From positions 22,878,001 through 22,942,000 of the forward strand of contig OZ281495.1 in the NCBI GenBank assembly GCA_965637545.1: a stretch of DNA of 64,000 nt. Direction: 5' to 3'. The notes below the pieces were generated by a model, which saw only the letters and a program-made list of their open reading frames with translations, was not told the origin of the DNA and did no database searches. Source of the DNA: Phallusia mammillata (Eukaryota). The translations under genes and the position numbers were made by a program. Shown here in pieces: positions 77-25,524 of this stretch. Every line of letters starts with the position of its first letter. The first letter of the stretch is position 1.

Positions 77-3000
77 GTATGAAACTGATGCAAAAGATGG
101 GTTACAAGGTCGGCAAGGGACTTGGAAAGGGAAATCAGGGTATTGTTAATCCCATTGAAGCACACAAACGGGTGAGGAAGGTTGGGCTTGGAGCAGCAGG
201 CACAGAAAGAACCAAACAGTCTCTTATTCATTTTCCGACACAAGATTCTGAAGATGAGGAGGATGAAGAATTTAAAGTAAGTTTCGTTAACACTTTCAGT
301 GTGGCCAGCAATCACACAAACATGCGCTCAGTGCAGACTTTTGTTAATTGTTTTAATTATTGCACACAATTGCATTGTCCTGTCTGCTGCAAGGCCTCAA
401 CACTATCAATAACGAATTACAATGGAAGTAATGTTACAACTTATGCACTGGAAAACTTCTAGACAATAATTTACTGCTTTAAATTTAACTTGTGCGAACA
501 TTTATACATTATAACTACCTCAAGCCTTTGCAAGTAAAGTTGCCTTTGTTACATTGTAATGAAACAAGACTCCATTCATATAATCAAGTTTAATGCGCGC
601 CAACCGTTGCCCAAGGCATGCGCCGATCACACATTTTATGGTGTGGGCTGTCTCTACGTACATTAACAGACAGCCGCCTTTTTGATCAAAAACTTTTGAC
701 TTAAATTTAAGTCAATCCGCACTCTTCGCAAAACGTCTTTGGACATAGATATGGTCAACCGCATTAAAAGTGTTAAAATTATATTTTACCTCCTTTTTAA
801 AATATCTATTAATGTCCAAAAACACTGTATTCAAAAGGAAATAAAAGGCGTTTGATTTTGGAATTGTTTTGTGCTTGACCTAAAATTATGTTTAGTCGGA
901 GTTACAACAGTGGAGAAAGGGTGATGAGCCAAAACAAAAGAAACCAAAATACAAATACAAGACAATTGAAGAACTTAAGAAAAGCGGGAAAACAGCAAGA
1001 AAAAGAAAAGAAGCATCCCCTGAGCCCACAACTGCCCCAACCAGTGGTTTAGCAAATGTAAAAGTAATTGATATGACTGGAAAGGAGAAGAAAGTCTTTT
1101 CGGGGTAAGATTAGATAAAGTTAAACTAATAATTTAGGGATAATTGAAAAGTTTTGTTTGTTTGAACAAAGTTTACATTCTTTACAGGCCTGACCAAAAT
1201 AGTATAAATTTTCTCTTACTTCAAGTCTGATGCTTTGTCCGGGGTTGTATAGCTAGTCGTGCTTTGTCTAATGCTTCTAATGGTTAGATTCAAGGTTTCA
1301 TTTGAGAAATGAATACTTTATTTGAATAGTTGAAATACAAAAAATGCATTTAATCAGTATGCCATTTTCAGCATTCATCTATATTTGAATGTTGTGTTCT
1401 ACAATGCTTATTTTACAGTTATCATGCAATTGCTGGAAGAGTTGCTGCAGGATCCGATGTTGAGAGTGATGTGGAAGCAGAGGAAAGAGAGGATCGATCA
1501 GGAATCTTTTCATGTCCTGAGCTCCTTCACAACCTTGATACTTTGATTGAAGAAACTGAACAAAAGATACTATCTGTATTTACCTTCACCTTTTTATTAT
1601 GAATTGCAAACAAGTTAAAGTTTTTGCACCTAATTTCATCTGCTCGTAACTGTGCTTATTTTTCTTACTGTATCAGGTGGATAGACAGAAGCAATATGAA
1701 GATGATAGATCGGTCGGTCTTGAACATCAGCGCACCAAACTTGAGGAAACTTTGGAGAAAGAGGCAGATGAAATAAATCGTGTTGAGGTAAAGTTTTTTG
1801 TAATAGTTACTTACAAAAAAATCGCCCAGCTTGTTGCTTGGTAGATAAAGACTATAATATACCTTATGTCTATTTGTTGAAGGTTCATGAAAAACATTAA
1901 GTCATTAATCCTTAAGATTTTAAGATACATATATTTTGCCTTAACAGCATTATCAGTATCTTCTTCGAGTAAAACCTAATGTTTGTCATGAACTTTAATC
2001 AATTTGAAAAAGTTGTGTAGTTGTTCCTGGTATCTTTAACATAGTTTTCCCGAGTTCTGTGTCTTTAGTTTTCTGTACATTTAGACTGTTTTGAGAACTA
2101 TTCAACTTTGTGAGGAAAGATTAACCACAGAAGGCAACAATGAAGATTTACTTGATCATTTTGCCGAAGTAATTGCTGAGCTGCAGGTATATTGTTTAAA
2201 GCCAAATTTATATGCTAATAAAATTTTTAATATGTGATTTCGTGAATAAATCCATTTCTGTCTTCCAGGAAAAGTACTTTGCAGAATATAGGATGTTCGA
2301 GCTTTCCGACCTAGCAAGGGTAATGGTATATCCTTTACTACAAAAATATTTTGCGAAGTAAGCCACAGTGAATTGTTGTGTCTTTGTCTCTTTATCATTG
2401 GAGCTGCCACCTATGCAATAGCTTGTACAAAGGTTGCATAATGTGTCAGAAATTATTACACAAGAATAAAAAAAAATTGTCCACAAATTCAGAACTACAA
2501 TGTTTCAAAAAGTGCAAATTCAAACTTCTTGGGGCAAGTTATTAACATGTTAAATTTTGTGTTTAGTTGGAATCCACTGAAAGATCCACGTTTTGGAATC
2601 AGCGAAATGAAACGATGGAAGTTATTGTTCGAACTTGACAAATCTGCATATGCTGTGCAGGTATGCAACCTAATTTTTTTGATATAAGCTGTTAAGAAAC
2701 CCTTTTCATCAAATGTTTTAGTTTTTGTTTACCTGGCCAAACCCTTACAAAATAGTTTTTCTCAATAAGGCCTGGACTATTTTATTGCAATGCTAGGCAA
2801 CATTTCAGGTTTTGTTTGTTACTAACGACCGCCAGTGTGAGCTAGAGAGTTACAATAATGTGCAGATAGCTACCTATGTCTACTGAGGTAGTAATATTTT
2901 CTTTTCCAAAAAATATTTTCTTAAAATTTATCCATACCAAAATTGTCTTTATATCCTAGGTTCTGAAATTGAAATCAACGACCGCCGATACAAATAGTTT

Positions 3001-9150: not shown

Positions 9151-12100
9151 TTACTGGCCACCCGGCGTTTCATCATTTTCTACACCAACAAAGTCCTGCA
9201 AAAATAAATGACAACTCGGTGAAGTTTGTAAAATGCAATTTGCCAAATTATGTGCAGCAGTAAACTAAGGCACTCGTTGATATTTTGCTTAATTGATAAC
9301 AATAGTGTATGCATCCAATGAAACTAATAGATAAAACCAAAAAATTACTTCTGCATCTGTATAGGCTACATTATATGGAATCCTGACATACCGTTGTAGG
9401 CGTTTCGACAGGTGAGCTGGTGTTGTCGTTACTGAATAAACCCGGAAGGTCGCTATTAAATCCGTGATTGATGAGATCGGGAACAACCACTTCTTCAATC
9501 TCACCTGTTCCAAGAATGCAAATTAGTGAGAAACCAAAATCTGTAATTAGCTCAATGATTGGTCCACTAAGCAAGGTATAAACTTAGTCAAAAACGTTGA
9601 CTGTGCAAAGGGTCACACGTGCAATTAGCCGGTGGTGACATACATGTTAGTGTAACAGCACCCCGGCTTAAACATTTCTTTGCCCAAATTTAACAACTTT
9701 TCGATTCTAAACTAGGCGCGTAACTTTGCAAGTGCATCGATGATCGACTATCTTACCTCCCGAGTGGTCGTCGGGTGGCATAAGGTTATTTAAAAACTGG
9801 TGCTCCAAGAAAACGATTCGCGATTGCAGCGATGCGATCGTGTTCTTCATTTCCAGAAATTCTGCAGGGCTCAATGCCTGTGAAGTGAAACATACAGGTG
9901 GTCCATGCGCAAACAGTAAACAAGTGGTACAAGGTGACCTCAACATAAAGTATCCGCGCTATTTCGAAAATGAACCCCATAATACAAACTGGCGTGCTAT
10001 TATGGGATATAAGTAATAAACCCATGTGGAGCATTTCCATGCTTTGGTGCTTGGTGCTGTTTTTTTTTACCAGGTAGCCATTTGTCGTTGTTGGAAGGAG
10101 ACTTCTCCTTATTGGCCTTCAGCTTGTTCGCATTCAGTTCCAGGCTGCTCAGTCGATTGCGCACGTCCGTAATGACGATGTGCATACGACTGAAGTATTC
10201 TGATGTCTCAGTCACTTTACGGTCGAGCTTTTGAAGGCGTCGACTCACGCTCTTACACCGACATTTCAGTTTTAGTTTTTCCCCACAAATGTTAAACACT
10301 ACACTTACATAGGAACAAGATACTCACCGCGCCTAATGTAGCTTCCTTGTTTTCTTTGCTCTACAAAAAATATCAATTATGTCGATACTGGATGTTTTGT
10401 GGCCTATTAAAAGGCATCAAAGGGATGTTATCAATCTACATTACTTTTTCAAACGCTTTCGAAAGAACTGACAGTTATATCAATGAATATATTCATGCAA
10501 TTTAATTAATCGAAACCGCATGCAATGAAGAAGTAATCCTGCTTACCTTTCGACCTGGTGGTCCTCGTGGTCCTCGGGGACCCTACAATCAATACAAAGC
10601 AAATATTGTCATAAACATGAATCAGTACAAGCATTCCAAAGCACATGCAACAAGGATCACTGAAATTTGGTAATAAGGTGACTGCAAGGTTATGTGTTAT
10701 TGAAGGGGCAGGGCTGATGACATCCAATAGCAGCTTGCCTGATATTTGCTAAAGGCAATTCAACTTTCCTTCGTAGCAAGTTGTCGAAACCAAAGAAACA
10801 AATGTTATAATTACCCTTTTTCCGGTCCCGGGACGGCCACGGGGCCCTCTTGCTCCTCGCGCACCCTTTTCACCTTTAGCTCCTGGAGGTCCGATAGTTG
10901 TTTCGGGCCGACTTTCAATATGAGGCAAGATCTCCGACAAATCTTGTCCTGACAATTTATTTCAACAGTGTCATTATGGTCGGGCCACGGGATTCTCATG
11001 GACCATGTAAAAACATGTTTGAAAATGTTGTACTCGTTCAATAAACGATATCCCAAAATGGCATCAAGATCAATAGTCTATTTGTGTTTGCTTTCTATAA
11101 CTGATTTTATTTTTAGGATTTATTAAATCCTATTCCAAATCGTATTTGTTCCGCAAGCAAGGAATAAATGTTCTTCCATGTGTTATGTCATTTACTCATC
11201 TCTCCCCCACCATGGATGAACACGGTATTGTTTACATGCGAGTAAATTGACGAATCGGCCCAAAAAAGCCTACAAGATAAGTTACTTTTCCTGGAAATAG
11301 TGCCTTATTTAAATGTTACCACTCTTCTGTAGCTAAACTTGTAGTTTGAGATGGCATGCCTACGTGTCCTAAATACCACGTCCCTGTCACTCCATGATTT
11401 CAAACAGGCGAAAAGCAAAACGCGGTACGTCAAATCCTTACCGCAAACTCAAAGCGTCGATTGATGGAATACATGCAAAGTGTCGGGCGCACCCTTTACA
11501 CAACAACACTGAAATACATCAGACTCACCCTGAAGGTCGCTCTCCAGTGTGATAGTGAAGTTGAAGCCGTCGCCACCACAAGCCTTCTTGCATTCCTCGC
11601 CCGTCTCAAAGTTGTTGTCGTTGCCGCGACAACCGCCGTATACGAACACGGAGCAGAGATTCGTCCTCTGATCAAAGAAGTATCTGTAGAGCCCGGCCTT
11701 GCATGGACCTTCTTGTAGAGGCAGGGAACACTTGAGATTCGGACCGGGTGCACCGTCGGCTGCAAAACCACAAATATGGTAGGCAAGGTAGTATTTAAGA
11801 GCTTTCAGAAGACCATTGAAAGATTTAAACATAAATAATCACACGTAGGCTATTCCATTTTGAGAATTCCTTTATAAATGTGAAACCAGTATTATCAAGA
11901 TATTATTTTAATTCCTTACCGGATCCACTTGATGTCAATCCACTAGCCGCGCGGTTCCGTGGAGGGTAAACAATACTGGGGACTCCCCCACACACGCTCA
12001 CACATTCTTCAGCTTCTTCGAAGTTGTTTGCGTTTCCTTGACAACCGCCGTACACAAAGATTTGGCATTTGTCGGTTTCCGGATTGTAGTAAAAGTGCTG

Positions 12101-15100
12101 TAAGGAACCTTTGCAAGGACCCTTTTTCTTCGGCAGCAAACAGCGAGCGGGCAAATTTTTTGTTACTAAGATGAAAAACAAATAGAAGTTAACAGCTCGC
12201 GCCTAAATCTTGCCCCAAGTTGATACATTTCGCCACGAAAACCCTTTCAGAGTTAAAAAAACCTTTCTATCACTTTATAAGTCCTTTCGAAGAATGTGAT
12301 TCTGTTTCACACAAAGATACTCGGTTAAGACACTCATTATTTTTCCTTACCTTTGTTTGGGGTTTCGTACACAGGCTCTCCACCACCACAAGTGTCCCGG
12401 CAGCCCCAAGGAGTGTGAAACCGATTCGCATTTCCCTGGCAACCACCATAGTTAAAAAGCTTGCATCGGTCCTCCGCACTGTCGTAGTAGAACCGTGGCA
12501 TCAATGCTTTGCAAGGACCCTCTCTTCGAGGGAACCGACATTTGTATGGCAAGTTGCGCCTTTCGCTCTCTAGATGAACACGGCAAGGCTTGTTACACAG
12601 ACAACGAACTGAACAAAATAAGGATGATTTGCAAATGTTCAGGCAAAATGATTCATTCCATGGTACCCTTGTGATTAACTTGCAATGACATAAAAGAAGG
12701 AACATGTTAGAATGGCTTTCATGCATGTTTAAATGTAGTCCAAACTCAAACTTCGGCAACGAGCGTGTAAGTCAGTTAGCTCAACTTTATGACCACCCAC
12801 ATCATTGCACAGATGTGGCGCATGGCTGTGAGCGACGGTTAAGTATGGGATGCAGCAACCACAGGTCGTGACGTCATACCGATTGACGTCGGCTCTCTAG
12901 TTGATCTGACTGACACGCCGTTTTGCATGAATTCTCCTTTGCAGACTTGCGTGCAAATGCTGGCGTTGGGAAATCGGTTGGTACTGCCTTGGCAACCGCC
13001 GTAGGTAAACTGAAGGCACTTGCCGATTCCGGCGTCGTAGTAAAAGCTCGCTTCAGTGTCATTGCATGGTCGCGGCTCGACCGAGTCGAAGCAGCGAGCG
13101 GGGATCGTGGACGCTGCGTGCCAGAGCGTCGTCAGTTATTATCGTAATGACGTTTGACACTTATACCATATTTCCGCTAACTCAAAACACACCCAGGTCT
13201 TATATGTCGATCACCAAAGTTAGGCAGAATGTAGCAAGCGGCCTCTAGGCTAATTCGGTTAAAGGTGCAGTTTGGACGTGACCACCTATTAATCACAACA
13301 CTATCACTTACCAATCGGGGTAGTCTGTGGTGGATATTCGGGATCGCACATCTGCTGGCATTGTGCTGGGGTTTCGAAATTGTTTGCATTTCCCTCACAT
13401 CCTCCGTATGTAAATAACTCACACGCCTGTGTGTGCTGATTGAAGTGATACTTGGGGAAGCGACCACGACAAGGTCCAGAATCCCGTGGTAGCAAGCAAA
13501 CTGTTTCGGAACCTTAACACACCGATATAATGTTTCAGAATGTTGCTCCAAAAAGCGTCAATGCAGTATATCAGTTGTTCCTATTTCTCTTTTGTGTGTT
13601 TTAGAGCGCAATACAGCGTTTTAAATGGATGTCACCGTTTGCCCATGAATATTGTTCATTTGCACCAGTGTTTTAAACTATATCGACAAAGCATTGGGGG
13701 GCAACCATATCGTTCTTAGGCTACCACATGTATCTAATAGGCTTGGGTAAAATTGACAGCAATCAAAAATCGCCAAGTAGAAATCTGTGCAGCATAACAT
13801 AAACGATGCGTTCCATGCGTGTTAGGTTGGAAACTTAATATTTCCTTTGCGACGTGACGGGAGCAAGAGGCGAGTTGCAATCGGGTTCAAGTGCTGATCA
13901 ATCAGCTTTGCCCGAACCGAGCGCCAAACATTCCGAAGTTAAGTGTTGCAGATTAAACTAATGCAACAAATGCAAGAAACGCTTATTGCTTGCCCATGTA
14001 AATTGCCTCAAGAGATAACAGTGTCGCCATGTACGAGCGACTTCAGACGTTGAAAACAGGTTGCATACTTTTCATACAGACGGGACGTTCATACCACAAA
14101 GGTCAAGAGGATGACAAACGGTGCACCATAACTTTTGTTTACAATGTTTTGAACAATAAGAGTGTTCGCTTTGCAAGTTAGTCTTCAGTACGAGTTTAAA
14201 ACTATATGTTTAAACAACTTTGTCAAAACCAGATATTTATGTTATAGAACGCGCTTGTTCGTATTTGCGTGTGGTCGGTTTACAGATAATCCTGAGCCTG
14301 CACCACTGAGCCATAAAAAGCTTTTAGGCTTATACGTACGGAATCAAATGGCCAAGCATAAACTTTTGCCAAAATTATAGTCATATCTTCCCACGTGACA
14401 TTACGGTACTCACCAGTTGGGGCAACTCTCACAATCACTGGGCATCCGAGAGGATCAAACGATCTTCTAAACCGGGATGAGGATGGCTCGTTGTCGTATC
14501 CCTCGTAACCTACGTACGTGTAGTCGTCGTATTCGTCTAATGATGTTGTGGTGGTGGCCGTTGTCGTGACAACCGTTTCACTTGATCCATCATCTTCGTC
14601 CCCACTCTCAGCACTTCCCTCTGCAAAAACGCGTTTTTATGTATTGATATGTAATGAAACTCATATAATAGGTTGCAGACTTCTAAGGAGTTATTATTGT
14701 ATCATTTTCTCAAATTTTATGTTCAATTAAATATTAAACAGAGTTTTAACCAGGGAGTCGAACCGCTTGTCATATGGGTTCAGGTTCGGTTCGGGTTCAC
14801 TTGGTTTTGTTTTTAAGGGTTCGGGTTCAGGTCCGGTTTTTAAAAATGTATATTTTCGGGTTCGGGTTTTGTTCCGGTTTGGGCAAGTTATCCGGTCCGA
14901 ACCGGTTTGCGGTTTTTAAACCTGTTCAAATGTTTCAGTTCAATTCTACCCATCATCTACTTGGCCTTATCAAACTCCAAAATAATTTTGACCGTGTGCT
15001 GTTATTTTTGACACGCCCTATATGTGTTATCTCGCGTATTCTTCAGTGCGCTGTTTTGAACAAAAAAATCATAAAATATAAAACAGACTGCATTTTTTTA

Positions 15101-18100
15101 CTGGTTCGGTTCCGGTTCGGGTCCAACGCCAAACAAAATATAGGTTTCAACTCCGGTTCGGGTTTTTAGAAAATCGTAAATAGCGGTTCGGGAAATTATC
15201 CGCTCAAACCGGTTCGCGGGTTCGGGTTCAGTTCCGGTTCGACTCCCTGGTTTTAACTGCTGTTTTTTTTTCATCATGTCTTAAGACTTAAATGATGTTC
15301 CAGGTGACGACACTTGTAATATGGAAACGTCCAAATGCCTATTAGTAAATAACATTTTGCTTCCCTGCGTATTCTGGGTACTTATACTATGCTGACTTTG
15401 ATTTTAGTTTTTTTTAAATGGTGTGTCATATCACTTGAAACACAATCTATTTTCAGTCTATTAGAAAGCGGTACCTTTATCTTCAGACTCAATCTGATGT
15501 GCACAGCATACTTCGCAACAATATCCCTCCGGCTTGTATTTGTATTTGCACGAGTTCAAGGATGGGCAAAGAATTTCAAAACAGATCGTCTCGCCATCAA
15601 GACAAAGGCATTCTTCGCAATTGGCCACTTTCCATAGGTCACCCTCGGCGTATACTTGACCATTGCTTATGCATGTATTCGATCCTGTTTGGCATAGCAT
15701 AAAAATAACATATTATTATTTTTTAATATTAACTGCATGCAAATATTGAGACACAATATTTGCTTTTTCTCAAGTGACAATTATCAAATAATACACAGCA
15801 AACGATTAATTACCTACAATTGAAGCAAAAACACGCGGTACAATTGTGACACCTTGCTACTCATGCTGCTACAACAAATCTGACCACTCAACAAATTACT
15901 TGCATGCTATGGCCAAATTTTTTTACTCAACTAATCACAAAAAACACTTTGTAACTGAATTCACACAAACAATGGGCTCGATGATGTTGCGTCGTCCCAT
16001 TAAAGGAGTACAGCACCGGCAAACACACCAATTAGAAAGCCACACTGAATACACCCAAATAATACATGCATTGTATAAATTTGCGACATTGACTTTTGAG
16101 CCTTTAATGGAAAATGGTGTATAAAGCATTGAATCATTGGGTGCTAAACAATGATTGCAAATTATTACATGAGTACGTGAAGCAGATTACATTGGGCAGT
16201 ACTGAATTATACGCCTTGGGAGACTGTGCCGCAGAAATACGCCTGGCAATGATGTGGTTGACACCTACCGCATGCAAAAACACACTACGAGAGTGAAGCG
16301 TACCAAAGAAGTGACTCAATTACACCGAACCTACACATGCACTGACAGATGAGTGTTCCTGATTATAATTGCATCATGAGGATTACTAAAGCGACGGTGA
16401 GCAATTATGGGTGGCAAACATTGCTTTTGAACACACGACTACAAGCAGTTTCACCACATTCCGGTTCCAGCCGATCTCTTTGCAGCGTTGGCCGCCGCAG
16501 AAATGTTTTAATCGTTATGCGGACACAAAATCTGTTTAAGCCGCTGTTGAACAGTTCGAGTTTCAGCGTACATCTTGTGTGAGCCTTCTGCAAAGAGGTC
16601 AGGCGGTGCCGTGTACGTGTGAGTCCACCAATCAGCTACCCGGGCACACACCACGCACATCTACAGGCGGTTCTGGAAAGCCAGACTCACCACAGGCCGA
16701 AAACACGACGTTGTCAATAGAGACGGACACCAGAGCGCCCGGTCCTGCCCTCGCCTCGAAAATGGCCTGGAAAGGTCGATTGTATTCGGGCAACGGGACA
16801 GTACCCCGCTCCCACGCGTCAGTGCCGTTGGATGTTATGTTAAGCACTGGTATCCGGTAACCAGAATTGCATGACAGGAGGTAAATCAGTAGACAGGGAC
16901 GTTCAGTTCTGCGTCCGCGAATGAGGTATCGAAACGTCATGCAGATGCCCTTTAAAGGGTTGACAAAGAAGGGACTTGAAACTGTGGCCACCGAATGATT
17001 TTCGATGTCTGAGGTAGTTGGATGAAAAGTAAGGAAGAAGTTGACGGAGGAGGTGCTGTTGCTCGCTAATCGAGAAGCGTTTTTGTCTTCGTGCAACGAC
17101 AGATCGTCATCGTCAGTCTCATCAACTAAATTGGCCGCAGGGTCGTCGCGGCGGTTCAGAAGTGGCTCAGAGTCGATGACCCAGCCTGACGAACCGGGCG
17201 GTCGACTGCTTGGTTCGAAGAGACACAGCGTGCCACCTTTCCGTTTTGTCTCGTTTGTAGCGTCGTAGTGACGATCGTCTCGCTTCCTTCGACGACCGGG
17301 CAGCGAGAGGACGTTCTCCTCGTCGAAGTCGCAGCTTATATCCATTATAAAACGCTTCCACAGGAGGCTGGCGCAAAAATCGACGGTGGCCGGACCTTCG
17401 GTGGCCCCACCTAGGCCGCTGAGTGGATCCGTACCCATCTCTGTGTAACGCGACGCGCATAAAGAAAAACGATTTTCCCGGTAATACGAAAGTTACAAAC
17501 ATACCGCTAGGGTGTCAATCTAAAACCAGCCTTAATCAGTCATATCATTACTTCTTATTTTAACCCTTTACTCGATAAATGTCAACTGCAAATGGATTCG
17601 AGGAAAAACTAAATATTTGACAATAGAAGGGACGCCAAGTGATCAAATGGACAAATCAAACACCACCACCGACTTAACGTAAGACTCGTGGTTTATAAAG
17701 GTTGTTTTGTTTCACAAACAAAAGCTCAGGAGGTTGTTTATCCGCATAGTGGCACTGTTCAATTGTCCTCTATTTCGGTCCCGCCAATGAGGCGTCATTA
17801 ATAACGTTGTGTATTCAACTCGTACGTATAGCTATTGAAGACACTGAGTGGATTTTTCTCTCGCCTTAACGATTGACAAAATGTCAAAGCAACTGCATCA
17901 AACACAATGAATTTTTACGAGTGTTCGAAACAAAGAAAGCCTTTGTTGGCCTCAAAAGATTTACGACGCAACGTGCTTGCACATAGTAAGCGAAAGGCAA
18001 AAACTCGCAGTAAATGCGACCAACACTGCTCAGACGATTTCCACAGCTATTTCCACCGCATTTGAGGCCTCAACATGCAGTTGGACTAAATGGTTAGAGC

Positions 18101-21100
18101 GGGAGAAACTTACCGTTTGTAGTTGACTCAGTGTTGTTTGTTTCTGCAGTACGAGAACAATCGCAAACACCTGGAGAACCCGGAGGACCTGGTGGTCCTT
18201 GCAATCCTGCTGGGCCTCTTTCTCCAGCTACACCCGAAATGTTAACCGGAGTGCCCGGCTCGCCCTTAGGCCCAGCCAAACCAGTCATTCCTTTCTCGCC
18301 TACACAAGACAAAGTTAAGTGACCGTATGTGGCATAAACAAACTGTTTGAATTTTTTACCTTTCTCACCCGGATTACCGTCAACTCCATCATTTCCGGGA
18401 GTTCCAGCAATTCCAGGTTCACCTGTTAAAAACGTGACTTTAGTATTGGACTCTCATGTAAAAGAAAACACTTTCAGTACCTTTTGGGCCAATGCCACCT
18501 ATGTCTCCTTTCATTCCCCTCAAGCCAGCTTCTCCTGGAGGTCCTGGTTCTCCCATAAGGCCTTGGGGTCCAGGCAAACCGTTCATACCCGGAAATCCGT
18601 GCTTACCAATACCTCCTATTTCACCCTTGTGGCCCTTCATTCCAGGAACACCAGGTGGCCCCATGAGGCCATGGGCACCATCACTTCCATTTACTCCTGG
18701 TTCGCCTTTTGGTCCCCGTAAGCCCACAGGCCCCTGCGGACCAACAGGACCGGCCGGAGGGACAGAAACCGATACTAATGCTCCTTCGCTCCCAAGCCTC
18801 CTGCCTGCCGCTTGAATGTTTATGACCTAAAAATGCATTATTATTCAATTAGTTAGGGTGTTTTTAAAAGACACGTAAATATTAAATCATCAGAAAAGTG
18901 CTTGATAACACATTTTACATTTCTAAAATATTCGACTTAAGATTTGTTTGCAGCAAGAGCACTAAAATCTAATGCAAACACGCTTTGAATGACGGCGTTC
19001 ACAAAAGCTAATTGATCAAGTGTTTGTAGTTCGTGCCAAATTCGCCACTTAGCCTCGACTGTTATGTTTGTCTTCACTCGCATAATAATGGCAAACACCA
19101 CTGCCAGTTCATGCCGTGTATCATATGCTAAAAACTACCGAAAAATTCGACAAAAAGAAGGTCGCCACCTAAGGCCAACAGAGTTCAATTATATTCTCGA
19201 TGAATATGTTTGTTTACACAAGTTTAAACGTCATTCAAAAATGCGGCTAACATCGATCATGTTCATATACGTGTTCACCAACTCTGAGGAGAATATTTTT
19301 CTCACCTGCTGCGATAAATCGTCAATGCGCTGGTTCAGCTGCTCCACCTTAGAACAGTTGTAGCACACTAGAAAACAGAAAATGCGTGATAATACAGTGC
19401 AACAATGTCAAGGTTAAAGTTTTCACAACGCTTTGATTGTTGCTGCTTCCTGCAAATTAGTTGGTCGTGCGGTCTGGTGGTTTTAGATTAAATATTTGGT
19501 TTGTTGGCCTACAAGCATTTCCGAGAAGAAACCCAGCCAAACCGCACCTGTTCCGTTGTAAGGTTGATTAGCGCCGGGCGGGCTTGCGTACCATCTCGCC
19601 ACCCAAGCATGTCTAACGTGTGTTTGGGGTTTGAGCGGGTGCCCAACAACTTGGCTATCTAGTCTAACCTAAATCCCCAACAAGTATGCGGTTTCCTTGA
19701 CCTTTAATCTTGCGTGTGGACACATTAGTATTATTTCGATCGTCCTTTAGCTAAATATACTCGTTAGGTAATATTCGGAAGTTTACAGTGCGTATTCAAG
19801 TATAGGATAGCCAACAAAACAAATAGCTGCTTTCAGGCCACATAGTGCTCTGCTGGCACAACAAATATATGCCAGGCACACCTGGTTGCGTATTTGTATT
19901 CGCGTATATTGACCTTCTTCGATAAGTTTACGAAACTGACATAAACTTTTGCAATCGATTGACAGTGTATTATGAACTATTGGCAATAGACAAGCACATC
20001 CAGATCAAAGTATCCAAGCCCCACCAAAACACAACAAGCGTCGAGAAGCAACGGCGGATATCGGCTCGTTGAAATCCAGCACGAAGCTCATAAGCCAGAC
20101 CGCAAAACACAGATTGGCTTCATTCAAATACAGGGGAACCCGCTCAAACCTTGCCACACCTTAACTTTGTATTCATGGCCTTGTCCGGAGTGACAACTAA
20201 AAGCAGTCTTCCAGCGTTGAAATGTAGGGCTACAGGCGCGATTACCACGATCGAAGTTGTTATTACGCGAGCGTGTAACCTTGTGATTTTTTCAGGCTCG
20301 AGAGACATTGGCGGTCAGTCGAGCGACCTAGACTGATTGAAAGACGGCGGTTGGTTTCCAGCACCCGCAGCGATTGAACTTTTGTGACAGCAGTGAGTAT
20401 ACATACCCGTCTACCTGAACGGTGTGTCACTTGCTTGCGACAATATGTGGTACCGTTAATGGTAACAAAATCAACATTATAAAATCGCGTTTTGAAGCTC
20501 TATGATTTCGTTTAGAGTTCCTACACGATTGCGATACCCCGTGTTGAAGGGCATCGGGGTGCATCTTGCTCATGGAAATCCTTGACTTTTTGCAAACAGC
20601 GCGTTGTTTCCGATTACCCCAGGACGCTTGCTATTTATAACTTAGCTTCGCCAATCAAATATTCGCTGCGTTTTGATAGCTTACACAGCCTCGGCAATCA
20701 ATCGTACACAAACCGCCTTGCAGACTGTTAAGTGAATTATCGCCACAGACGCCACCGTGATTAGGGTAAACTAATGTGAAGAGTAGGTTACTCTAGTTCG
20801 AGTGTGTATCGGCCAAAGATAAACCTCCTTTCAGCACACAAGCCGTATTAAATCTATTAACCATTGTCGATCTATTGGAATTAACGAAAGTTTATAAAGG
20901 TTGGCGGTTTCTGCTCCAGTATTTGATGCGGCAAGGTATTAAAAGGCTTATACCGTTCTCGCAATTTTCTCCGGAAAATCCTGGACAACATCTCCACTCG
21001 TCAGTCGACAGTTCTTGCATACGCATAGCGTATTTGCGACGTTTGGCTATGACGTAACTAAAAGCAAAGCACAAGTTTAGTGACGTACGCAGGCGTAGTA

Positions 21101-24100
21101 GGGCCATGGTCAGGAACACGATGAAAGACAAGGGCCCCAGGGAGCAAAGGCGGGCAAGCCCATTACTGCATCTTACTTAAGGGAATACTTCTTACTAAAC
21201 GAACCGATGATAGATGTGATTAGGATAACTAAACCTTGGCTAAATACATTACAGGCGAAGTGATGTCGCGGCAAAACGTACGTTGTCACTGTTTTATGTC
21301 TTTAACGAAAGTTCTGGAATCAGTACAAGCGAAATGCTTGTGCAACTGGGCCCCGGTTTAGGCACTAAGGCACTACCACACTCGGTTGTTGCCCACGGGA
21401 TTTAAGCTGGAGGGAATGATTTCAACTTACCTCACTTTGGGGTTGCAATACAAAGCTGACCACGGACAATGCGATACAACCCTTTTTAGGTAGGTCTGTG
21501 ACCCGTTCACATATCGTTGTGGGACGAGCTTTGTGGTGGGATAGGCACAATATCGACCAGTATATATGGTTCTTTTGTCAGCTGTACGCGGCACAAGTTC
21601 AAGATTCGGCGACGTAGAAGTACTGCAACGAGCAAAATGTTTACCTGTTTTGCATTGCGAAATGTGAATTGATACAAAATAAAACAATTAGTGTTTTTTG
21701 AGCATTCGTGTTGTGGAGAGTAAAATAGTTCGTTCCATATTTCAAAATCACGTTCCGGTTGTAAGTTAGAACATAAATTTGGTGCAATGTAATTGGAAAC
21801 GTAAGATATTGTAAAGTTGACAGGAATAGTTTTCGTGCTGGTGCAAAGTGGGTTTATTAAACCAGGGGTAAAGAAACTGAATCAACCTTCCGACTACTTT
21901 AATTTTATGGCTTTTTGAAAAGCGTCTGTATATCCCCTTATTATCGAGTAGGCTATTTATTCATTACACGGAATATTTTTCCATGTTACCTAGGATAAAT
22001 TATATGATTATACTTAATGCTATGTTTCCTGAATTTGATTACAATGTAAGGATTTTCTCGTACTGACATAACTTATGGCATATTGTTAATTTGAAATCTG
22101 GGAATCATGCCTCCAACGTTTATTGGAGAAGTAAGGCAAGATGCACTTAATCACACTCATAGCTTTATCATGCAACATAACAAAATTATACACATGCAGC
22201 AAACCAAAAGCATCAAAAACATGATCAACTGTATTGTGAGTAATGTTTAAATGTTTATTCACAGATTATGGGTTGACAAATGTGTAAAACATGCTGGGCG
22301 TACCTTGCCCTATTATTGCCAGATTTGGAACGCCTACGCGTGTACAGGCTAGTAGAGTAACTTCCGTATGAACTGTATCTGAGGCAAAACACATGAAATG
22401 TAAACGTATCAGCCATAGCAGAACACAAACATAAAACACAAGGCATCATTAGATTACAAAAGCCGATATTAGCACGCTGCTAAACAATAAGAGCATGCAA
22501 ATTGTAAACAAGCCGCACAACCCACATGTATTTGTTCATTGGAAGCTTATGTGAAAGTATTTGTGCTACCAGTTAGATCCATTGGTTATTTCCCGTGTTA
22601 GGCGGCAAATGCCAAACTTTTTCAGCTGACAATCGCGTTGTTCGTCGAATCGTCAAAAGTCGGAAGCGAGTTAGCGCGTCAAATCGTGGTCGTGTGGGTT
22701 CGTTAACTGACGTCAAAAGCAAGACGTCATAGCGTCTGATGCATATGACAAGCGAATGTTGGTAGGTGTTTGTCAAATGCAATCCATGTGATGTAATATT
22801 TATGACACCTGCTTTAAATCCACTTTGGTGCAAAGGATGTATCGCTTACATACAAATCACATACTCAACAGCTTCCTCTAACTCACGCCTCGGTCGATTC
22901 AACAGCACGCAAGCAGTCTTTAAAAATAAACTTCCCCATACATTTGAAGTGTTTTTAAATGTCAGGCCTGCAAACTTTAAAGGTCGACTGACTCACTTTC
23001 ATGTGCATTTTCAACGTTATCGCAAAAAGTCCAAAGCAGTAGCCCCGAATAAATACTTTGTGGGTGGTGGGAGTTTTTATGAAGACAGAACGACCGCTCT
23101 CGCCGGAAGGTCAACAAAACGGGAATGCCGCGCTCGTAAATCTAGCAAGCGCTTCTTTAACTCCACTACACTACTGGGTGAAAAGTAGCCCCATACTTCA
23201 AGAGAGGACTTGGCGTTCAGTTAAAAAAAATTTAAAATAAAAAAAAGAGCAAAAAATTTACCCTTGTTAAAGGACGGGCTATAAGCCTGAGATCCTAGAA
23301 ATAATACCACATTTGGGGGCACCTAAATCCGTTAATATAGTTAATAGACCATGTTGGCAACACATTAAGGGCACTTTCATGTATTTGGTTTCGTAATTAG
23401 GCACGACGATCCCTAATCGATTTACAAATCCCGAAGTTTATTAACGGGCTTCCTCCTTTTTATCGGAAAGAAAAAGTCAAACGATTGAGTTATTTATGAA
23501 TGAAGTGCGAGTGTTACGGCCTTGTTTCCTCTCGTCCGTTTCCCACACCATTTAATGACCTGTTCGCGATGAATTCAAAGCAAAGCGAAGTGCGTTTCCG
23601 GAGCGACCAAATACCCTTGCTCGCTTTCTCAATGACAGACCATTCCATTCATGAAGGATATTTTTAATTTTCAGGCACGGATTTTAATGCTGAACGCAGC
23701 TCTTTAAAGGGAATGGTTCGACACCGCTAGGAGTGTGAGCCAGTTGTTGATTCACGTCTCAAGTGAAGTCTCAACAAGACCGTACAAGTGCTTTTCTGGC
23801 AGCGGTGAAACACGGCTGTCTAAAGTTTGCCAAACGTTAGAACTTGTAATCAAATTTGCTTTACTTTTCCACTATGTTTAACAAGGTCAGGTATATTTGC
23901 TGAATCGAAAGTTCGAACCTCAACATAGCACACCGCACCTTTGTAAACGCTTTATCAAAGTTTGGGCATAAAAGGTAAATTTACGCTGCAGCATCTTCGA
24001 CCGCAATCTACACCGATTCAAAGAATACGTGGGAAGTTCGCTGAGTTCCCTTATATGTGACCAAACTTCAAAAGACCCCTTTCATTTTTGTCCAAAAGCT

Positions 24101-25524
24101 TTGCGGCGACGCTTTCAATTAAACCGCAAAGGTATTTTGATTTTATCTCATTCGCTTTTGTGGAGCAAACGCACACAGCCGGCGGACTACGGACTCGGAG
24201 AGGTAAAGGAAAACAGTACGAAGATTTGAGTGGCGGACGAGAAAATGTCTTTGGTGAAGTTTAGGTCTGACGCACGACACTTTCCGCTTATCACTGCGGA
24301 TCCTTCAAATAAATTGACAGCTTGCTCAAGAAGGCCGCGTTGTGGCCGAATCGGAAACCGACTTAACACCCTCGAGGTGCAACGCCCAATGAATCGAAGC
24401 ACTTAAAGTAAAATCCTAATTGCGGACGGATCACCGTTCGGCGACGGTCAACATCCCGAGTATAATCCTCCGTTTGGTGACTACACCATTTCTGAAGACA
24501 ACTTATTTCCGATTTCGCCAGCTAATCGCATTTGCTGCGATGGGACAACAAAACGCTCGTTACCGCAGTTGCCTTGGGCCGCTTGCGATCGAACGATATG
24601 AGACGATCGTCATTTATTTACCTCCCAAACAGCGACGACATGCACCTATTTGCGAAGCTGTGCACAAAGTATAGCAATCATAGTGATTTGCTCACAAAGT
24701 GTTCATACATTGATCACTGCACTCAGTGGATTGATTCATGAGTATTTGAGATCAGCATTTGGGTGATCGAAAACCCCAGGCAATGAATTTCAGAACTCTC
24801 AACTTGTAAAGATGGTATCTCAGGGCTATGTACTTCGTGGTTAATAGAGCATCCGCTATGCATACCATTTTCTGGGCTAATTCGTTTAATCTTTCTGCTG
24901 ATACGATTTTATACACAGCTGCAGTGTAAGTTGACTCATTCAGTTTTGCGGGAAATTTAATACAGACGACTTTAGAAAACCCGGTTAAGTGTTGCCGAAG
25001 TTTGGTGCAGAATTGCCCAGCTTTATCGCACCCTTGCTCTAAAACCCTAACCACCACAGCATTGCGCTGAGATAACAAAGTTGTATGCACTCAAAGGGCG
25101 CAATTGCTTCCATGAAAGAGGAAAATGAAGGGATCTATCTTTAATGAGATCTCACTTTCTGTTTGAAGTTTCGCATGAATGAAGATTATCCGGCCAATGT
25201 TTATTTAGATTTCGCGACTCGTCGATGTCGGGCGCCGTGAGCACAATAACTTTTCGGCAGCGTTTAGCAAAACAGCTTAGCTAAATACATCATATGCCAC
25301 AAATAGCAACAAAGAATTACTGTATATTAAGTACAAAGCCATTCTTTATGGGCACTACGTGTATATATGGAAATAAAGTATAAAAGTGAAACTAGCGATG
25401 CGTCATACCTGTTATTTCGGCGAGCTTGTCGTCTTGTCCTTTTGGCAGAAAATGCAGAGTCAATATTAGCTGCAACCAACAGTGTAGCGAAAACCAACAT
25501 GCAAGTCGTCCGTGAGAAGTTCAT
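9151..25524 (-). CDS. EMID1/COL26A1-like secreted multidomain collagen: signal peptide-EMI-CxNC coiled coil-collagen-MAM-VWC-acidic linker-5 Kunitz-collagen-coiled coils
   Basis: Minus-strand exons: 25409-25524 (signal peptide MNFSRTTCMLVFATLLVAA), 22304-22378, 21431-21622 and 20954-21057 (EMI, ending EWRCCPGFSGENC), 19306-19367 (VCYNCSKVEQLNQRIDDL), 18481-18826, 18360-18422, 18114-18299 (Gly-X-Y), 16691-17440 (MAM), 15475-15684 (VWC), 14414-14620, 13312-13512, 12880-13113, 12351-12569, 11920-12165, 11529-11759 (five Kunitz), 10815-10948, 10547-10582 (Gly-X-Y), 10328-10360, 10071-10251, possible micro-exon 9939-9958, 9757-9877 (IASLQSRIVFLEHQF), 9392-9504, 9151-9195. Splice phases are compatible throughout except at the 10071/9877 junction. 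Automated annotation might split this into two genes. Confidence 0.8.
9757..10948 (-). other. Second collagen segment and C-terminal coiled coils of the EMID1/COL26A1-like gene
   Basis: GPPGAKGEKGARGARGPRGRPG, GPRGPRGPPGRK, heptad-like VSRRLQKLDRKV...VRNRLSSLE and IASLQSRIVFLEH, which resembles the LAERVLILE motif of vertebrate COL26A1/EMID1. Confidence 0.75.
11529..13512 (-). other. Array of five Kunitz/BPTI domain exons
   Basis: Each exon has six Cys with the FxYGGCxG pattern. Reactive-site segments in transcript order: GPCRGRF, RPCNDTE, GPCKALM, GPCKGSL, GPCKAGL. The second domain (12880-13113) is absent from the ORF track. Confidence 0.92.
14751..15249. mobile_element. hAT-type MITE, 499 bp, intronic
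   Basis: TIR CAGGGAGTCGAACC...GGTTCGACTCCCTG; perfect 8-bp TSD GTTTTAAC (14743-14750 and 15250-15257); many subterminal (C)GGTTC repeats. Confidence 0.92.
15475..15684 (-). other. VWC (chordin-type cysteine-rich) domain exon
   Basis: CISNGQVYAEGDLWKVANCEECLCLDGETICFEILCPSLNSC...GYCCEVC; phase 1-1 exon. Confidence 0.9.
16691..17440 (-). other. MAM domain exon with long acidic/basic insertions
   Basis: ISCDFDEE start, CMTFRY, WERGTVPL, FQAIFEA, VSIDNVVFSAC end; 750-nt phase 1-1 exon. Confidence 0.85.
18114..18826 (-). other. First collagen (Gly-X-Y) segment
   Basis: Three exons of continuous Gly-X-Y, ending GPPGPPGSPGVCDC. Confidence 0.92.
20954..21622 (-). other. EMI domain exons
   Basis: GRYCAYPTTKLVPQRYVNGSQTYLKRVVSHCPWSALYCNPKVSY...EWRCCPGFSGENC fits the EMI consensus (C...NGS...C.W...C...WRCCPG(Y/F)xGxxC). 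Confidence 0.88.

What the first reader, a model, noticed from the sequence alone, without database searches (positions are those of the whole stretch)
9151..25524. Chimeric EMID1/COL26A1-like collagen with an exon-shuffled MAM-VWC-5xKunitz cassette
Both ends match vertebrate EMID1/COL26A1: signal peptide, EMI, CxNC coiled coil, two collagen segments and a C-terminal LAERVLILE-like coiled coil. The short linker between the two collagen segments is replaced here by about 700 aa of MAM, VWC, an acidic linker and five Kunitz domains. All eight inserted exons are symmetric phase 1-1 (750, 210, 207, 201, 234, 219, 246, 231 nt), the signature of exon shuffling, and each could be skipped without a frameshift. 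I know of no described protein with this architecture. A trimeric matrix protein displaying up to 15 Kunitz domains plus potential BMP-binding VWC could be a tunicate-specific protease-inhibitory ECM scaffold (tunic, notochord sheath or adhesive organ).
Basis: partly seen in the sequence, partly recalled or inferred. Interest (0 to 1): 0.85.

Follow-up and report, generated by a model that had tools for sequence, protein, structure and literature searches.

The report
Collagen gene with protease-inhibitor cassette
A probable sea-squirt gene encodes a secreted EMI-domain collagen whose two collagen stretches are separated by a 766-residue insert of one MAM, one VWC and five Kunitz protease-inhibitor modules; the same layout is kept in at least three other species and matches no named protein, so it is a real but moderately surprising new variant of a known matrix-protein family.

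Summary
On the minus strand, 21 GT-AG exons from 25524 to 9151 give one open reading frame of 1326 residues. Its order is signal peptide, EMI, CxNC coil, collagen (51 Gly-X-Y triplets), a CxC knot, MAM, VWC, an acidic linker, five Kunitz domains, a short second collagen, a coiled coil and a C-terminal motif.

Pfam confirms each domain, and a predicted structure confirms the MAM fold.

The new evidence is comparative. Contigs from other species show the same exons, order, strand and junction phases. Two carry the whole gene, with 11 and 4 Kunitz exons. One of these gives a continuous spliced frame from the first collagen exon to the C-terminal motif exon.

In the window, the intron ahead of the MAM exon holds no start codon with a signal peptide, and the last Kunitz exon ends in a conserved donor with no stop. 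One gene is therefore much more likely than a nested second gene.

No named or full-length protein with this MAM type turned up in 1.84 billion representatives, and no paper describes the layout.

Not tested: transcripts, sequence-level kinship with vertebrate EMID1/COL26A1, and function. Verdict: a new variant of a known kind, of moderate interest.

The parts
25409..25524 (-). Exon 1: start codon and signal peptide, followed by a basic stretch; ends in phase 2
   Evidence: First ATG of the open segment, a hydrophobic core and a GT donor. Signal-peptide call is by eye.
21431..21622 (-). Exon 2: first half of the EMI domain (three Cys)
   Evidence: Phase 2-2, strong splice sites. tblastn matches in L001, L002 and L004 at 50-67% identity. 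No Pfam hit on its own.
20954..21057 (-). Exon 3: second half of the EMI domain with the WRCCPG motif
   Evidence: Pfam EMI E 1.5e-4, profile positions 43-69 of 69. Conserved in L001, L002 and L004.
19306..19367 (-). Exon 4: CxNC motif and short coil
   Evidence: Phase 1-0. The same exon with CxNC and a QQ|gt end is present in L001, L002 and L004.
18481..18826 (-). Exon 5: first collagen exon
   Evidence: Pfam Collagen E 5.6e-15; Gly-X-Y run.
18360..18422 (-). Exon 6: 63-nt collagen exon, phase 1-1
18114..18299 (-). Exon 7: end of collagen 1, a CxC motif and a Ser/Thr-rich tail; phase-1 donor
   Evidence: The Gly-x-CxC motif and a phase-1 donor are conserved in L001, L002, L004 and L006.
16691..17440 (-). 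Exon 8: MAM domain with two disordered inserts; the first insert carries an RRRKR furin-like site
   Evidence: Pfam MAM E 1.5e-14. AlphaFold2 core pLDDT 80-90 and Foldseek top hits are all MAM domains. Ten orthologous exon ORFs. Phase 1-1 in five species.
15475..15684 (-). Exon 9: VWC domain with CxxCxC and CCxxC motifs
   Evidence: Pfam VWC E 1.5e-12. Nearest solved chains are the collagen II VWC (1u5m, 5nir) and then NELL2. Conserved in L001, L002 and L004.
14414..14620 (-). Exon 10: acidic, Thr- and Tyr-rich linker with an RFRR site and a lone Cys
   Evidence: No Pfam family. Acidic orthologous exons with a lone Cys in L001, L002 and L004.
13312..13512 (-). Exon 11: Kunitz 1, P1 Arg
   Evidence: Pfam Kunitz_BPTI E 1.1e-21. 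Orthologue is first in the array of every species.
12880..13113 (-). Exon 12: Kunitz 2, P1 Asn inside an N-D-T sequon; the most divergent copy
   Evidence: Pfam E 2.3e-13. 29-41% identity to the other four. By eye, the Kunitz sequences show no counterpart in species B or C.
12351..12569 (-). Exon 13: Kunitz 3, P1 Lys
   Evidence: Pfam E 6e-18. By eye, the sequences pair it with Kunitz 9 of species B and Kunitz 2 of species C.
11920..12165 (-). Exon 14: Kunitz 4, P1 Lys
   Evidence: Pfam E 2.3e-21. By eye, the sequences pair it with Kunitz 10 of species B and Kunitz 3 of species C.
11529..11759 (-). Exon 15: Kunitz 5, P1 Lys, with a conserved GGDG-F/Y-NFT tail that runs into a phase-1 donor
   Evidence: Pfam E 4.2e-20. 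Nearest solved chains are SmCI, boophilin, TFPI, bikunin and BPTI. The tail is conserved in species B and C; the phase-1 donor was confirmed in species B.
10815..10948 (-). Exon 16: linker plus eight Gly-X-Y triplets (collagen 2a), phase 1 to 0
   Evidence: An exon with the same phases at the same place in species B.
10547..10582 (-). Exon 17: 36-nt collagen exon (collagen 2b), phase 0-0
   Evidence: Counterpart collagen exons in species B and C.
10071..10251 (-). Exon 18: about 60-residue coiled-coil exon; the donor after W-L-x-G is conserved; the acceptor is uncertain (10251 or 10227)
   Evidence: conserved in species B (37%, E 8e-6) and in species C.
9757..9861 (-). Exon 19: C-terminal motif (SR-I-V/L-F-LE), phase 1-1
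   Evidence: conserved in species B and C.
9392..9504 (-). Exon 20: acidic, Pro/Ser-rich tail (tentative)
   Evidence: Good splice sites and the right phases. Only a compositional resemblance in species B.
9151..9195 (-). Exon 21: last 14 codons and the stop (tentative)
   Evidence: Strong acceptor, phase 0, stop ends at 9151.
10328..10360 (-). Possible extra 33-nt phase 0-0 micro-exon with strong splice sites; not in the main model
   Evidence: No comparative support.

Best explanation
This is one protein-coding gene on the minus strand, with 21 exons and about 1326 residues. It is an EMID/Emu-type collagen: signal peptide, EMI domain, CxNC coil, collagen, second collagen and C-terminal coiled-coil domain. 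Its inter-collagen linker holds a cassette of eight symmetric phase-1 exons. Shown: the exon model, the domain identities, the conservation of exon order, strand and junction phases in other species, and the change in Kunitz exon number between species. Inferred: the protein is secreted. The collagen and coiled-coil segments on both sides of the cassette zip three chains together, and the CxC motif after collagen 1 locks them with disulfides. The MAM-VWC-Kunitz segments would then loop out as three arms from a matrix-anchored stalk. Four of the five Kunitz domains have Arg or Lys at P1, so they most likely inhibit trypsin-like serine proteases. The collagen-II-like VWC may bind BMP/TGF-beta-type ligands. 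Furin-like sites in the MAM insert and in the acidic linker may allow processing into two trimeric halves.
For: One ORF with canonical splice sites over 21 exons. Domains confirmed by Pfam and the MAM fold by structure. The same exon order and strand appear in L001, L002/L003, L004/L008/L015 and partly in L006. The collagen-1 donor, MAM acceptor and MAM donor are phase 1 in four to five species. Species B gives a continuous spliced frame from collagen 1 through 11 Kunitz exons to the C-terminal motif, with consensus sites and every cassette exon phase 1-1. The window has no Met plus signal peptide plus phase-1 donor in the 673-nt intron before MAM, and the first-codon Met of the window's MAM exon is not conserved. 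The last Kunitz exon has a conserved tail; it ends in a phase-1 donor with no stop in the window and in species B. There is no AATAAA between 18114 and 17440. P1 residues are R, N, K, K, K. The VWC is closest to the collagen II VWC.
Against: There is no transcript evidence. No spliced long ORF containing this MAM exists in the 1.84-billion-protein library, so joining of collagen 1 to MAM and of Kunitz 5 to collagen 2 is inferred from phases and conservation only. The donor at 18114 and the acceptor at 10948 are also compatible with each other, so a cassette-less 560-residue isoform is possible. AATAAA signals lie 400-570 nt after the Kunitz 5 donor. The acceptor of the coiled-coil exon is weak and the last two exons lack comparative support. 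Trimerisation, inhibition, ligand binding and furin cleavage are all untested. The furin-like site in the MAM insert is absent from some orthologues.
Confidence: 0.7

Rival explanations
1. Alternative splicing dominates. The main product is a cassette-less EMID-like collagen of about 560 residues (18114 spliced to 10948). Some or all cassette exons are included only in particular tissues or stages, as happens with the single VWC exon of procollagen II.
For: All cassette exons and both flanking junctions are phase 1, so any subset can be skipped in frame. The VWC exon most resembles the collagen II VWC. That exon is known to be alternatively spliced (IIA/IIB), which is established knowledge and was not tested here.
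Against: Every cassette exon type is conserved as coding sequence in divergent species, so the long form must be made and selected for. Nothing here measures isoform ratios. This reading is compatible with the main explanation and does not exclude it.
Confidence: 0.2
2. There are two transcription units. A MAM-VWC-Kunitz gene is nested, on the same strand, in a large intron of an EMID-like collagen gene. It is perhaps expressed through SL trans-splicing onto the MAM acceptor, where an ATG is the first full codon in this species.
For: The window's MAM exon begins with ..ag|AG ATG... Other first-stage notes of this scan report an ascidian spliced leader elsewhere in the genome (unchecked). AATAAA signals follow the Kunitz 5 exon, and reading through its donor reaches a stop after 26 codons.
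Against: That Met is followed by no signal peptide, although every downstream domain is disulfide-rich and extracellular. It is absent at the same place in L001, L002 and L004. The window's upstream intron has no signal-peptide exon. The last Kunitz exon ends in a phase-1 donor right after a conserved tail; the tail is shared by three species and the donor was confirmed in two.
Confidence: 0.08
3. The cassette is decaying or non-functional exon debris, or an assembly chimera, and the open frame is fortuitous.
For: No expression data. The genome has no gene calls in the protein collections searched.
Against: No stop in 3981 nt over 21 exons. All 30 Kunitz cysteines are intact, and every Kunitz exon gives a full-length Pfam match. 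The same layout occurs in independent long-read and short-read assemblies of other species.
Confidence: 0.02

Closest known systems
EMID1 / EMID2 (Emu1 / Emu2; EMID2 = collagen XXVI alpha 1)
   Same: N-terminal EMI domain with seven Cys, two collagen stretches, a C-terminal non-collagen domain, and no long EMILIN-type coiled coil or gC1q. This is the architecture as defined in PMC13326518. From recall only, it also shares a CxNC motif after EMI and a hydrophobic ...R-V/I-L/V-I/F-LE motif near the C-terminus.
   Different: A 766-residue MAM-VWC-acidic-5xKunitz cassette lies between the collagen stretches. An extra 60-residue coiled-coil exon follows collagen 2. Sequence-level orthology to the vertebrate proteins was not tested.
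Collagens with a Kunitz module (collagen VI alpha 3, VII, XXVIII)
   Same: A collagen triple helix and a Kunitz/BPTI domain in one chain (established knowledge).
   Different: Those carry a single C-terminal Kunitz domain next to VWA/FN3 arrays and have no EMI domain. Here an array of 4-11 Kunitz domains sits internally between two triple-helical segments.
Procollagen IIA N-propeptide VWC (COL2A1 exon 2)
   Same: The VWC exon's best solved relatives are the collagen II VWC (1u5m E 1.2e-9, 5nir). It is a single-exon module of about 69 residues sitting in a collagen chain.
   Different: It is located inside the chain, after a MAM domain, and not in an N-propeptide. Ligand binding is untested.
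Multi-Kunitz inhibitors (TFPI, bikunin, boophilin, SmCI, papilin)
   Same: Tandem canonical six-Cys Kunitz domains, mostly with Arg or Lys at P1. These are the best PDB matches.
   Different: Those are soluble inhibitors or ADAMTS-like matrix proteins with no collagen, EMI or MAM.
MAM-domain proteins (meprins, neuropilins, RPTP mu/kappa, enteropeptidase)
   Same: MAM beta-sandwich fold.
   Different: Here the MAM has two long disordered inserts (residues 42-71 and 95-130 of the exon) and an extra N-terminal Cys-x3-LW segment, conserved only among the orthologues.

Membership tests
[quoted passage not shown] | N-terminal EMI domain (about 80 residues, seven conserved Cys) | tested here: met
   Pfam EMI on the second-half exon (E 1.5e-4, 22.9 bits, below the 25-bit cut-off because only half the domain was scanned). 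Seven Cys including WRCCPG in the spliced model. The two halves could not be scanned together.
[quoted passage not shown] | Two collagen stretches | tested here: met
   43+8 and 8+4 Gly-X-Y triplets. Pfam Collagen.
[quoted passage not shown] | Conserved Emu-type C-terminal domain | not testable with these tools
   A C-terminal motif is conserved among the orthologues. No vertebrate EMID1/EMID2 sequence could be fetched, and there is no Pfam model. The resemblance is from recall only.
[quoted passage not shown] | No gC1q and no other globular domain besides EMI | tested here: not met
   No C1q-like exon was recognised by eye among the minus-strand open segments downstream. However, MAM, VWC and five Kunitz domains are present. 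This makes it a variant and not a plain member.
Kunitz/BPTI serine-protease inhibitors | Six-Cys spacing and profile match | tested here: met
   All five exons match.
Kunitz/BPTI serine-protease inhibitors | Basic P1 residue after the second Cys, as expected for trypsin-like targets | tested here: met
   R, N, K, K, K: four of five are basic. Kunitz 2 has Asn in an N-glycosylation sequon.
Kunitz/BPTI serine-protease inhibitors | Measured protease inhibition | not testable with these tools
   Needs recombinant protein.
MAM domain | Profile match and beta-sandwich fold | tested here: met
   Pfam E 1.5e-14. Foldseek top hits are 8yt7, 7auw, 5l73 and 2c9a.
VWC (chordin-like cysteine-rich) domain | Profile match with CxxCxC and CCxxC motifs | tested here: met
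   Pfam E 1.5e-12 over the full 57-position profile. Both motifs are visible in the exon translation.

The most novel reading that the evidence does not exclude
This is a widespread, so far unannotated, probably tunicate-wide matrix collagen built as a processing-dependent two-part device. Furin-type cleavage in the MAM insert or the acidic linker would split it into an EMI-collagen-MAM-VWC trimer (matrix anchoring, BMP/TGF-beta capture) and a collagen- and coiled-coil-held trimeric Kunitz array (local protease shield). The Kunitz number would be tuned by tandem exon gain and loss (4, 5, 11) in line with each lineage's tunic or notochord-sheath biology.
Probability: 0.15. Interest if true: 0.65.

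Novelty: new variant of a known kind. Interest (0 to 1): 0.47.

Why it matters
If the long transcript is real, this is a clean and datable case of exon shuffling in a chordate matrix gene. Three modules with different origins, each encoded by phase 1-1 exons, were placed inside the non-collagen hinge of an EMI collagen. The Kunitz array then grew and shrank by tandem exon duplication. It would be, to my knowledge, the first collagen with an internal Kunitz array held between two trimerising segments. It would give a natural scaffold that displays many protease-inhibitor domains on the matrix. It also links an EMID-type protein to a VWC module; vertebrate EMID2 is reported to block TGF-beta maturation (PMC13326518). 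The gene is missing from named protein sets, so it is also an annotation gap. It does not open a long-standing question.

Tried and rejected
1. A full-length search was not possible. The spliced protein has no reference and was not typed in. The search for homologous proteins only sees proteins of 0.55-1.75 times the query length. No vertebrate EMID1/COL26A1 sequence could therefore be fetched, and sequence-level kinship is untested.
2. ESM Atlas look-ups with the C-terminal motif exon and the first EMI exon gave only low-score unrelated clusters.
3. Paper searches for the run, assembly and metagenome accessions of the orthologous contigs found nothing, so their host organisms stay unidentified.
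The tunicate assignment therefore rests on unchecked notes of this scan.
5. Tandem Repeats Finder and Rfam found nothing in 8-27 kb.
6. I considered a splice path from a phase-1 donor at 10555 to an acceptor at 10298, which would add a Cys-rich stretch before the coiled coil. I rejected it. The donor at 10547 is much stronger, and species B has a stop just upstream of its coiled-coil exon.
7. I considered skipping the coiled-coil ORF altogether. I rejected this because the ORF is conserved in species B and C.
8. Long multi-MAM proteins among the library hits were checked with Pfam and are unrelated architectures.


Full report
**What is there**

The window has no N runs. On the minus strand between 25524 and 9151 there is a chain of open segments that encode recognisable extracellular modules. 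I listed AG and GT sites with their phases around each segment and assembled a model. The result is 21 exons and 3981 nt. It gives one open reading frame of 1326 residues with a single stop, which ends at 9151.

The order along the protein is:
- signal peptide, with the ATG at 25524
- EMI domain, split over two exons
- a short exon with a CxNC motif
- collagen 1, with 43 + 8 Gly-X-Y triplets over three exons, ending in a CxC motif and a Ser/Thr-rich tail
- MAM
- VWC
- an acidic Thr/Tyr-rich linker
- five Kunitz domains
- collagen 2, with 8 + 4 triplets over two exons
- a coiled-coil exon of about 60 residues
- a C-terminal exon with a hydrophobic SR-I-V-F-LE motif
- two tentative short tail exons

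**Check of the observation**

The eight cassette exons are 750, 210, 207, 201, 234, 219, 246 and 231 nt. The donor before the cassette (18114) and the acceptor after it (10948) are also phase 1. Any subset of cassette exons could therefore be skipped in frame. Skipping all of them would leave a 560-residue protein.

Pfam gives:
- MAM, E 1.5e-14
- VWC, E 1.5e-12, over the whole profile
- Kunitz_BPTI for all five exons, E 2e-13 to 1e-21
- Collagen
- EMI for the second-half exon (profile positions 43-69 of 69, 22.9 bits, below the 25-bit cut-off because only half a domain could be scanned)

The acidic linker, the CxNC exon and the C-terminal exons match no Pfam family.

An AlphaFold2 model of the MAM exon, built on an alignment of ten orthologues, has a confident beta-sandwich core (pLDDT 80-90) and two disordered inserts. 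Its best Foldseek matches in the PDB are all MAM domains: insect SR-C, meprin beta, enteropeptidase, neuropilin-1 and RPTP mu.

**One gene or several: comparative evidence**

A profile-free HMMER search of 1.84 billion representatives with the MAM exon returned two kinds of hit. Some were long multi-MAM proteins at 23-28% identity, and the eight hits I checked with Pfam (three of them short orthologue ORFs) showed no EMI, collagen or Kunitz domain. The others were about ten exon-sized ORFs at 36-54% identity. These share the odd N-terminal segment (Cys-x3-LW ... SCDF) and end at the same Cys-Gly.

These ORFs come from metagenome or raw-read assemblies (ENA, JGI, Logan). None has a name or an accession in a curated source. 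A word-indexed search of 5.8 billion clusters added nothing closer.

I fetched the contigs and ran tblastn with the window model:
- Species A (L001, plus four further assemblies) carries EMI a, EMI b, the CxNC exon, collagen, MAM, VWC, the acidic linker and the first Kunitz, in the same order and on the same strand. All five contigs then end.
- Species B (L002/L003, a 930-kb contig) carries the whole series, with 11 Kunitz exons. These are followed by a linker exon, a collagen exon, the coiled-coil exon (37% identity, E 8e-6) and the C-terminal motif exon.
- Species C (L004/L008/L015, a 642-kb contig) carries the whole series with 4 Kunitz exons. An intron of about 7.5 kb that holds a DUF4817 ORF comes before the coiled-coil exon.
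- Species D (L006) shows collagen exons directly upstream of MAM.
- The CxNC exon is present in A, B and C.

Junction phases are conserved:
- The last collagen-1 exon ends, just after a Gly-x-CxC motif and a short tail, in a consensus phase-1 donor in A, B, C and D.
- The MAM exon has a phase-1 acceptor in five species and a Cys-Gly|gt phase-1 donor in four of them, as in the window.

For species B, a dynamic-programming chain was constrained only to match phases between neighbouring exons. It returned a continuous frame from collagen 1 to the C-terminal motif. Every intron had a consensus-like site and every cassette exon was phase 1-1.

**Against a nested, independent MAM-Kunitz gene**

- The 673-nt intron before the window's MAM exon holds no Met followed by a hydrophobic signal and a phase-1 donor. 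The scattered candidates in other species are not conserved.
- The Met that opens the window's MAM exon is followed by no signal peptide and is absent at that place in A, B and C.
- The last Kunitz exon carries a tail (GGDG-F/Y-NFT...) conserved in the window, B and C. In the window and in species B that tail runs straight into a phase-1 donor with no stop.
- There is no AATAAA between 18114 and 17440.

I therefore put about 0.8 on the long single transcript existing. No transcript was seen. No spliced long ORF with this MAM is in the libraries. A cassette-less isoform cannot be excluded.

**Anatomy worth noting**

- By eye, the Kunitz sequences suggest four ancestral domains shared across species: the first, two middle ones and the last with its tail. 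No tree or identity matrix between species was computed.
- The window's Kunitz 2 is the most divergent copy, at 29-41% identity to the others. Its P1 residue is Asn inside an N-D-T sequon. By eye it has no counterpart in B or C.
- Species B has seven near-identical extra copies, which points to recent tandem exon duplication.
- P1 residues are R, N, K, K, K in the window and mostly R or K elsewhere. This is the signature of inhibitors of trypsin-like proteases (established knowledge of BPTI-type inhibitors).
- The best solved relatives of Kunitz 5 are SmCI, boophilin, TFPI, bikunin and BPTI.
- The best solved relatives of the VWC exon are the collagen II VWC (1u5m, 5nir) and then NELL2. In COL2A1 that module is a single, alternatively spliced exon of about 69 residues (my knowledge, not tested). 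This fits a shuffled exon taken from a fibrillar collagen.
- The first MAM insert carries RRRKR. Similar basic clusters occur in several orthologues but not in all.
- The acidic linker carries RFRR (RRKR in species A) just before a conserved lone Cys.

**How it most likely works (inference)**

The protein is probably secreted. It would be trimerised by collagen 1 plus the CxC knot on one side of the cassette, and by collagen 2 plus the coiled coil on the other side. The cassette of each chain would then bulge out between two zipped segments. The EMI domain would tether or multimerise the molecule in the matrix, as in other EDEN proteins (PMC13326518). The arms would carry a MAM (adhesion or oligomerisation), a VWC (possible BMP/TGF-beta binding) and an array of serine-protease inhibitors. 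Cleavage at the furin-like sites could yield two separately trimeric products. None of this was tested.

**Comparison with what is known**

[quoted passage not shown] The flanks of this gene fit that description. I recognised no C1q exon downstream, by eye. I could not compare sequences with vertebrate EMID proteins, so orthology is unproven. The 'no other globular domain' criterion is plainly not met, which makes this a variant.

Collagens VI alpha 3, VII and XXVIII carry one C-terminal Kunitz domain (my knowledge). None has an internal array, an EMI domain or a MAM domain. Full-text searches for the domain combination, and for Kunitz plus EMI in ascidians, found no description.

**Organism**

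I could not identify the organism. Other first-stage notes of this scan report an exact ascidian spliced leader elsewhere in the genome (unchecked). The leader is not in this window or in the fetched loci. One orthologue cluster comes from Tara Oceans marine metagenomes, which suggests pelagic relatives. 'Tunicate-specific' therefore remains a conjecture. What can be said is that no annotated proteome in the library holds this MAM type in a long protein.

**Verdict**

The gene is real, conserved and unannotated. The architecture is a new variant of the EMID-type collagens, made by exon shuffling. It is of solid interest for matrix evolution and as a natural multivalent inhibitor scaffold. It is not categorically new, and its function is inferred only.

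Noticed in passing
L003:5100-13600 (species B, ENA ERZ21736675 contig ctg14291l): Eleven Kunitz exons. Seven are near-identical (CTLPKQTGPCRGRIEKFYYDSQTQQC...), which indicates recent tandem exon duplication. One copy has Ile at P1.
   Followed up: partly
L001, L011, L012, L013, L014 (species A): Five independent assemblies (ENA and JGI metagenome contigs) all end just after the first Kunitz exon. This would be expected if repeated Kunitz exons break short-read assemblies there.
   Followed up: no
window 18114-18180 (minus strand); L001:8690-8755; L002:7850-7913; L004:8630-8681; L006:495-566: A Gly-x-Cys-x-Cys motif directly after the last triplet of collagen 1 is conserved in five species. 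It is a likely inter-chain disulfide knot.
   Followed up: partly
window 17290-17330 (minus strand, inside the MAM exon): A furin-like RRRKR lies in a disordered insert between the first two MAM cysteines. Similar basic clusters occur in P0002, P0003, P0010 and P0015 but not in P0012 or P0019.
   Followed up: partly
window 10328-10360 (minus strand): A 33-nt open phase 0-0 segment with a strong acceptor and donor lies between the second collagen exon and the coiled-coil exon. It may be a micro-exon and has no comparative support.
   Followed up: no
L008:15095-15382 (same as L015:11241-11528): A DUF4817 (transposase-associated) ORF lies inside the long intron between collagen 2 and the coiled-coil exon of species C.
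   Followed up: no
L010 (ENA ERZ976226, Tara Oceans PRJEB4352); clusters of P0019 and P0040: Orthologous MAM exons recur in many small marine-metagenome contigs (7 and 6 members). This points to an abundant pelagic carrier, possibly a pelagic tunicate.
   Followed up: no
window 79-462 (plus strand): An ORF that, by eye, looks like a G-patch motif followed by an acidic stretch. It is probably an exon of a neighbouring gene on the other strand.
   Followed up: no
window 13000-13093 (minus strand, Kunitz 2): The P1 position is Asn within an N-D-T glycosylation sequon, so this domain is probably not a canonical inhibitor.
   Followed up: no
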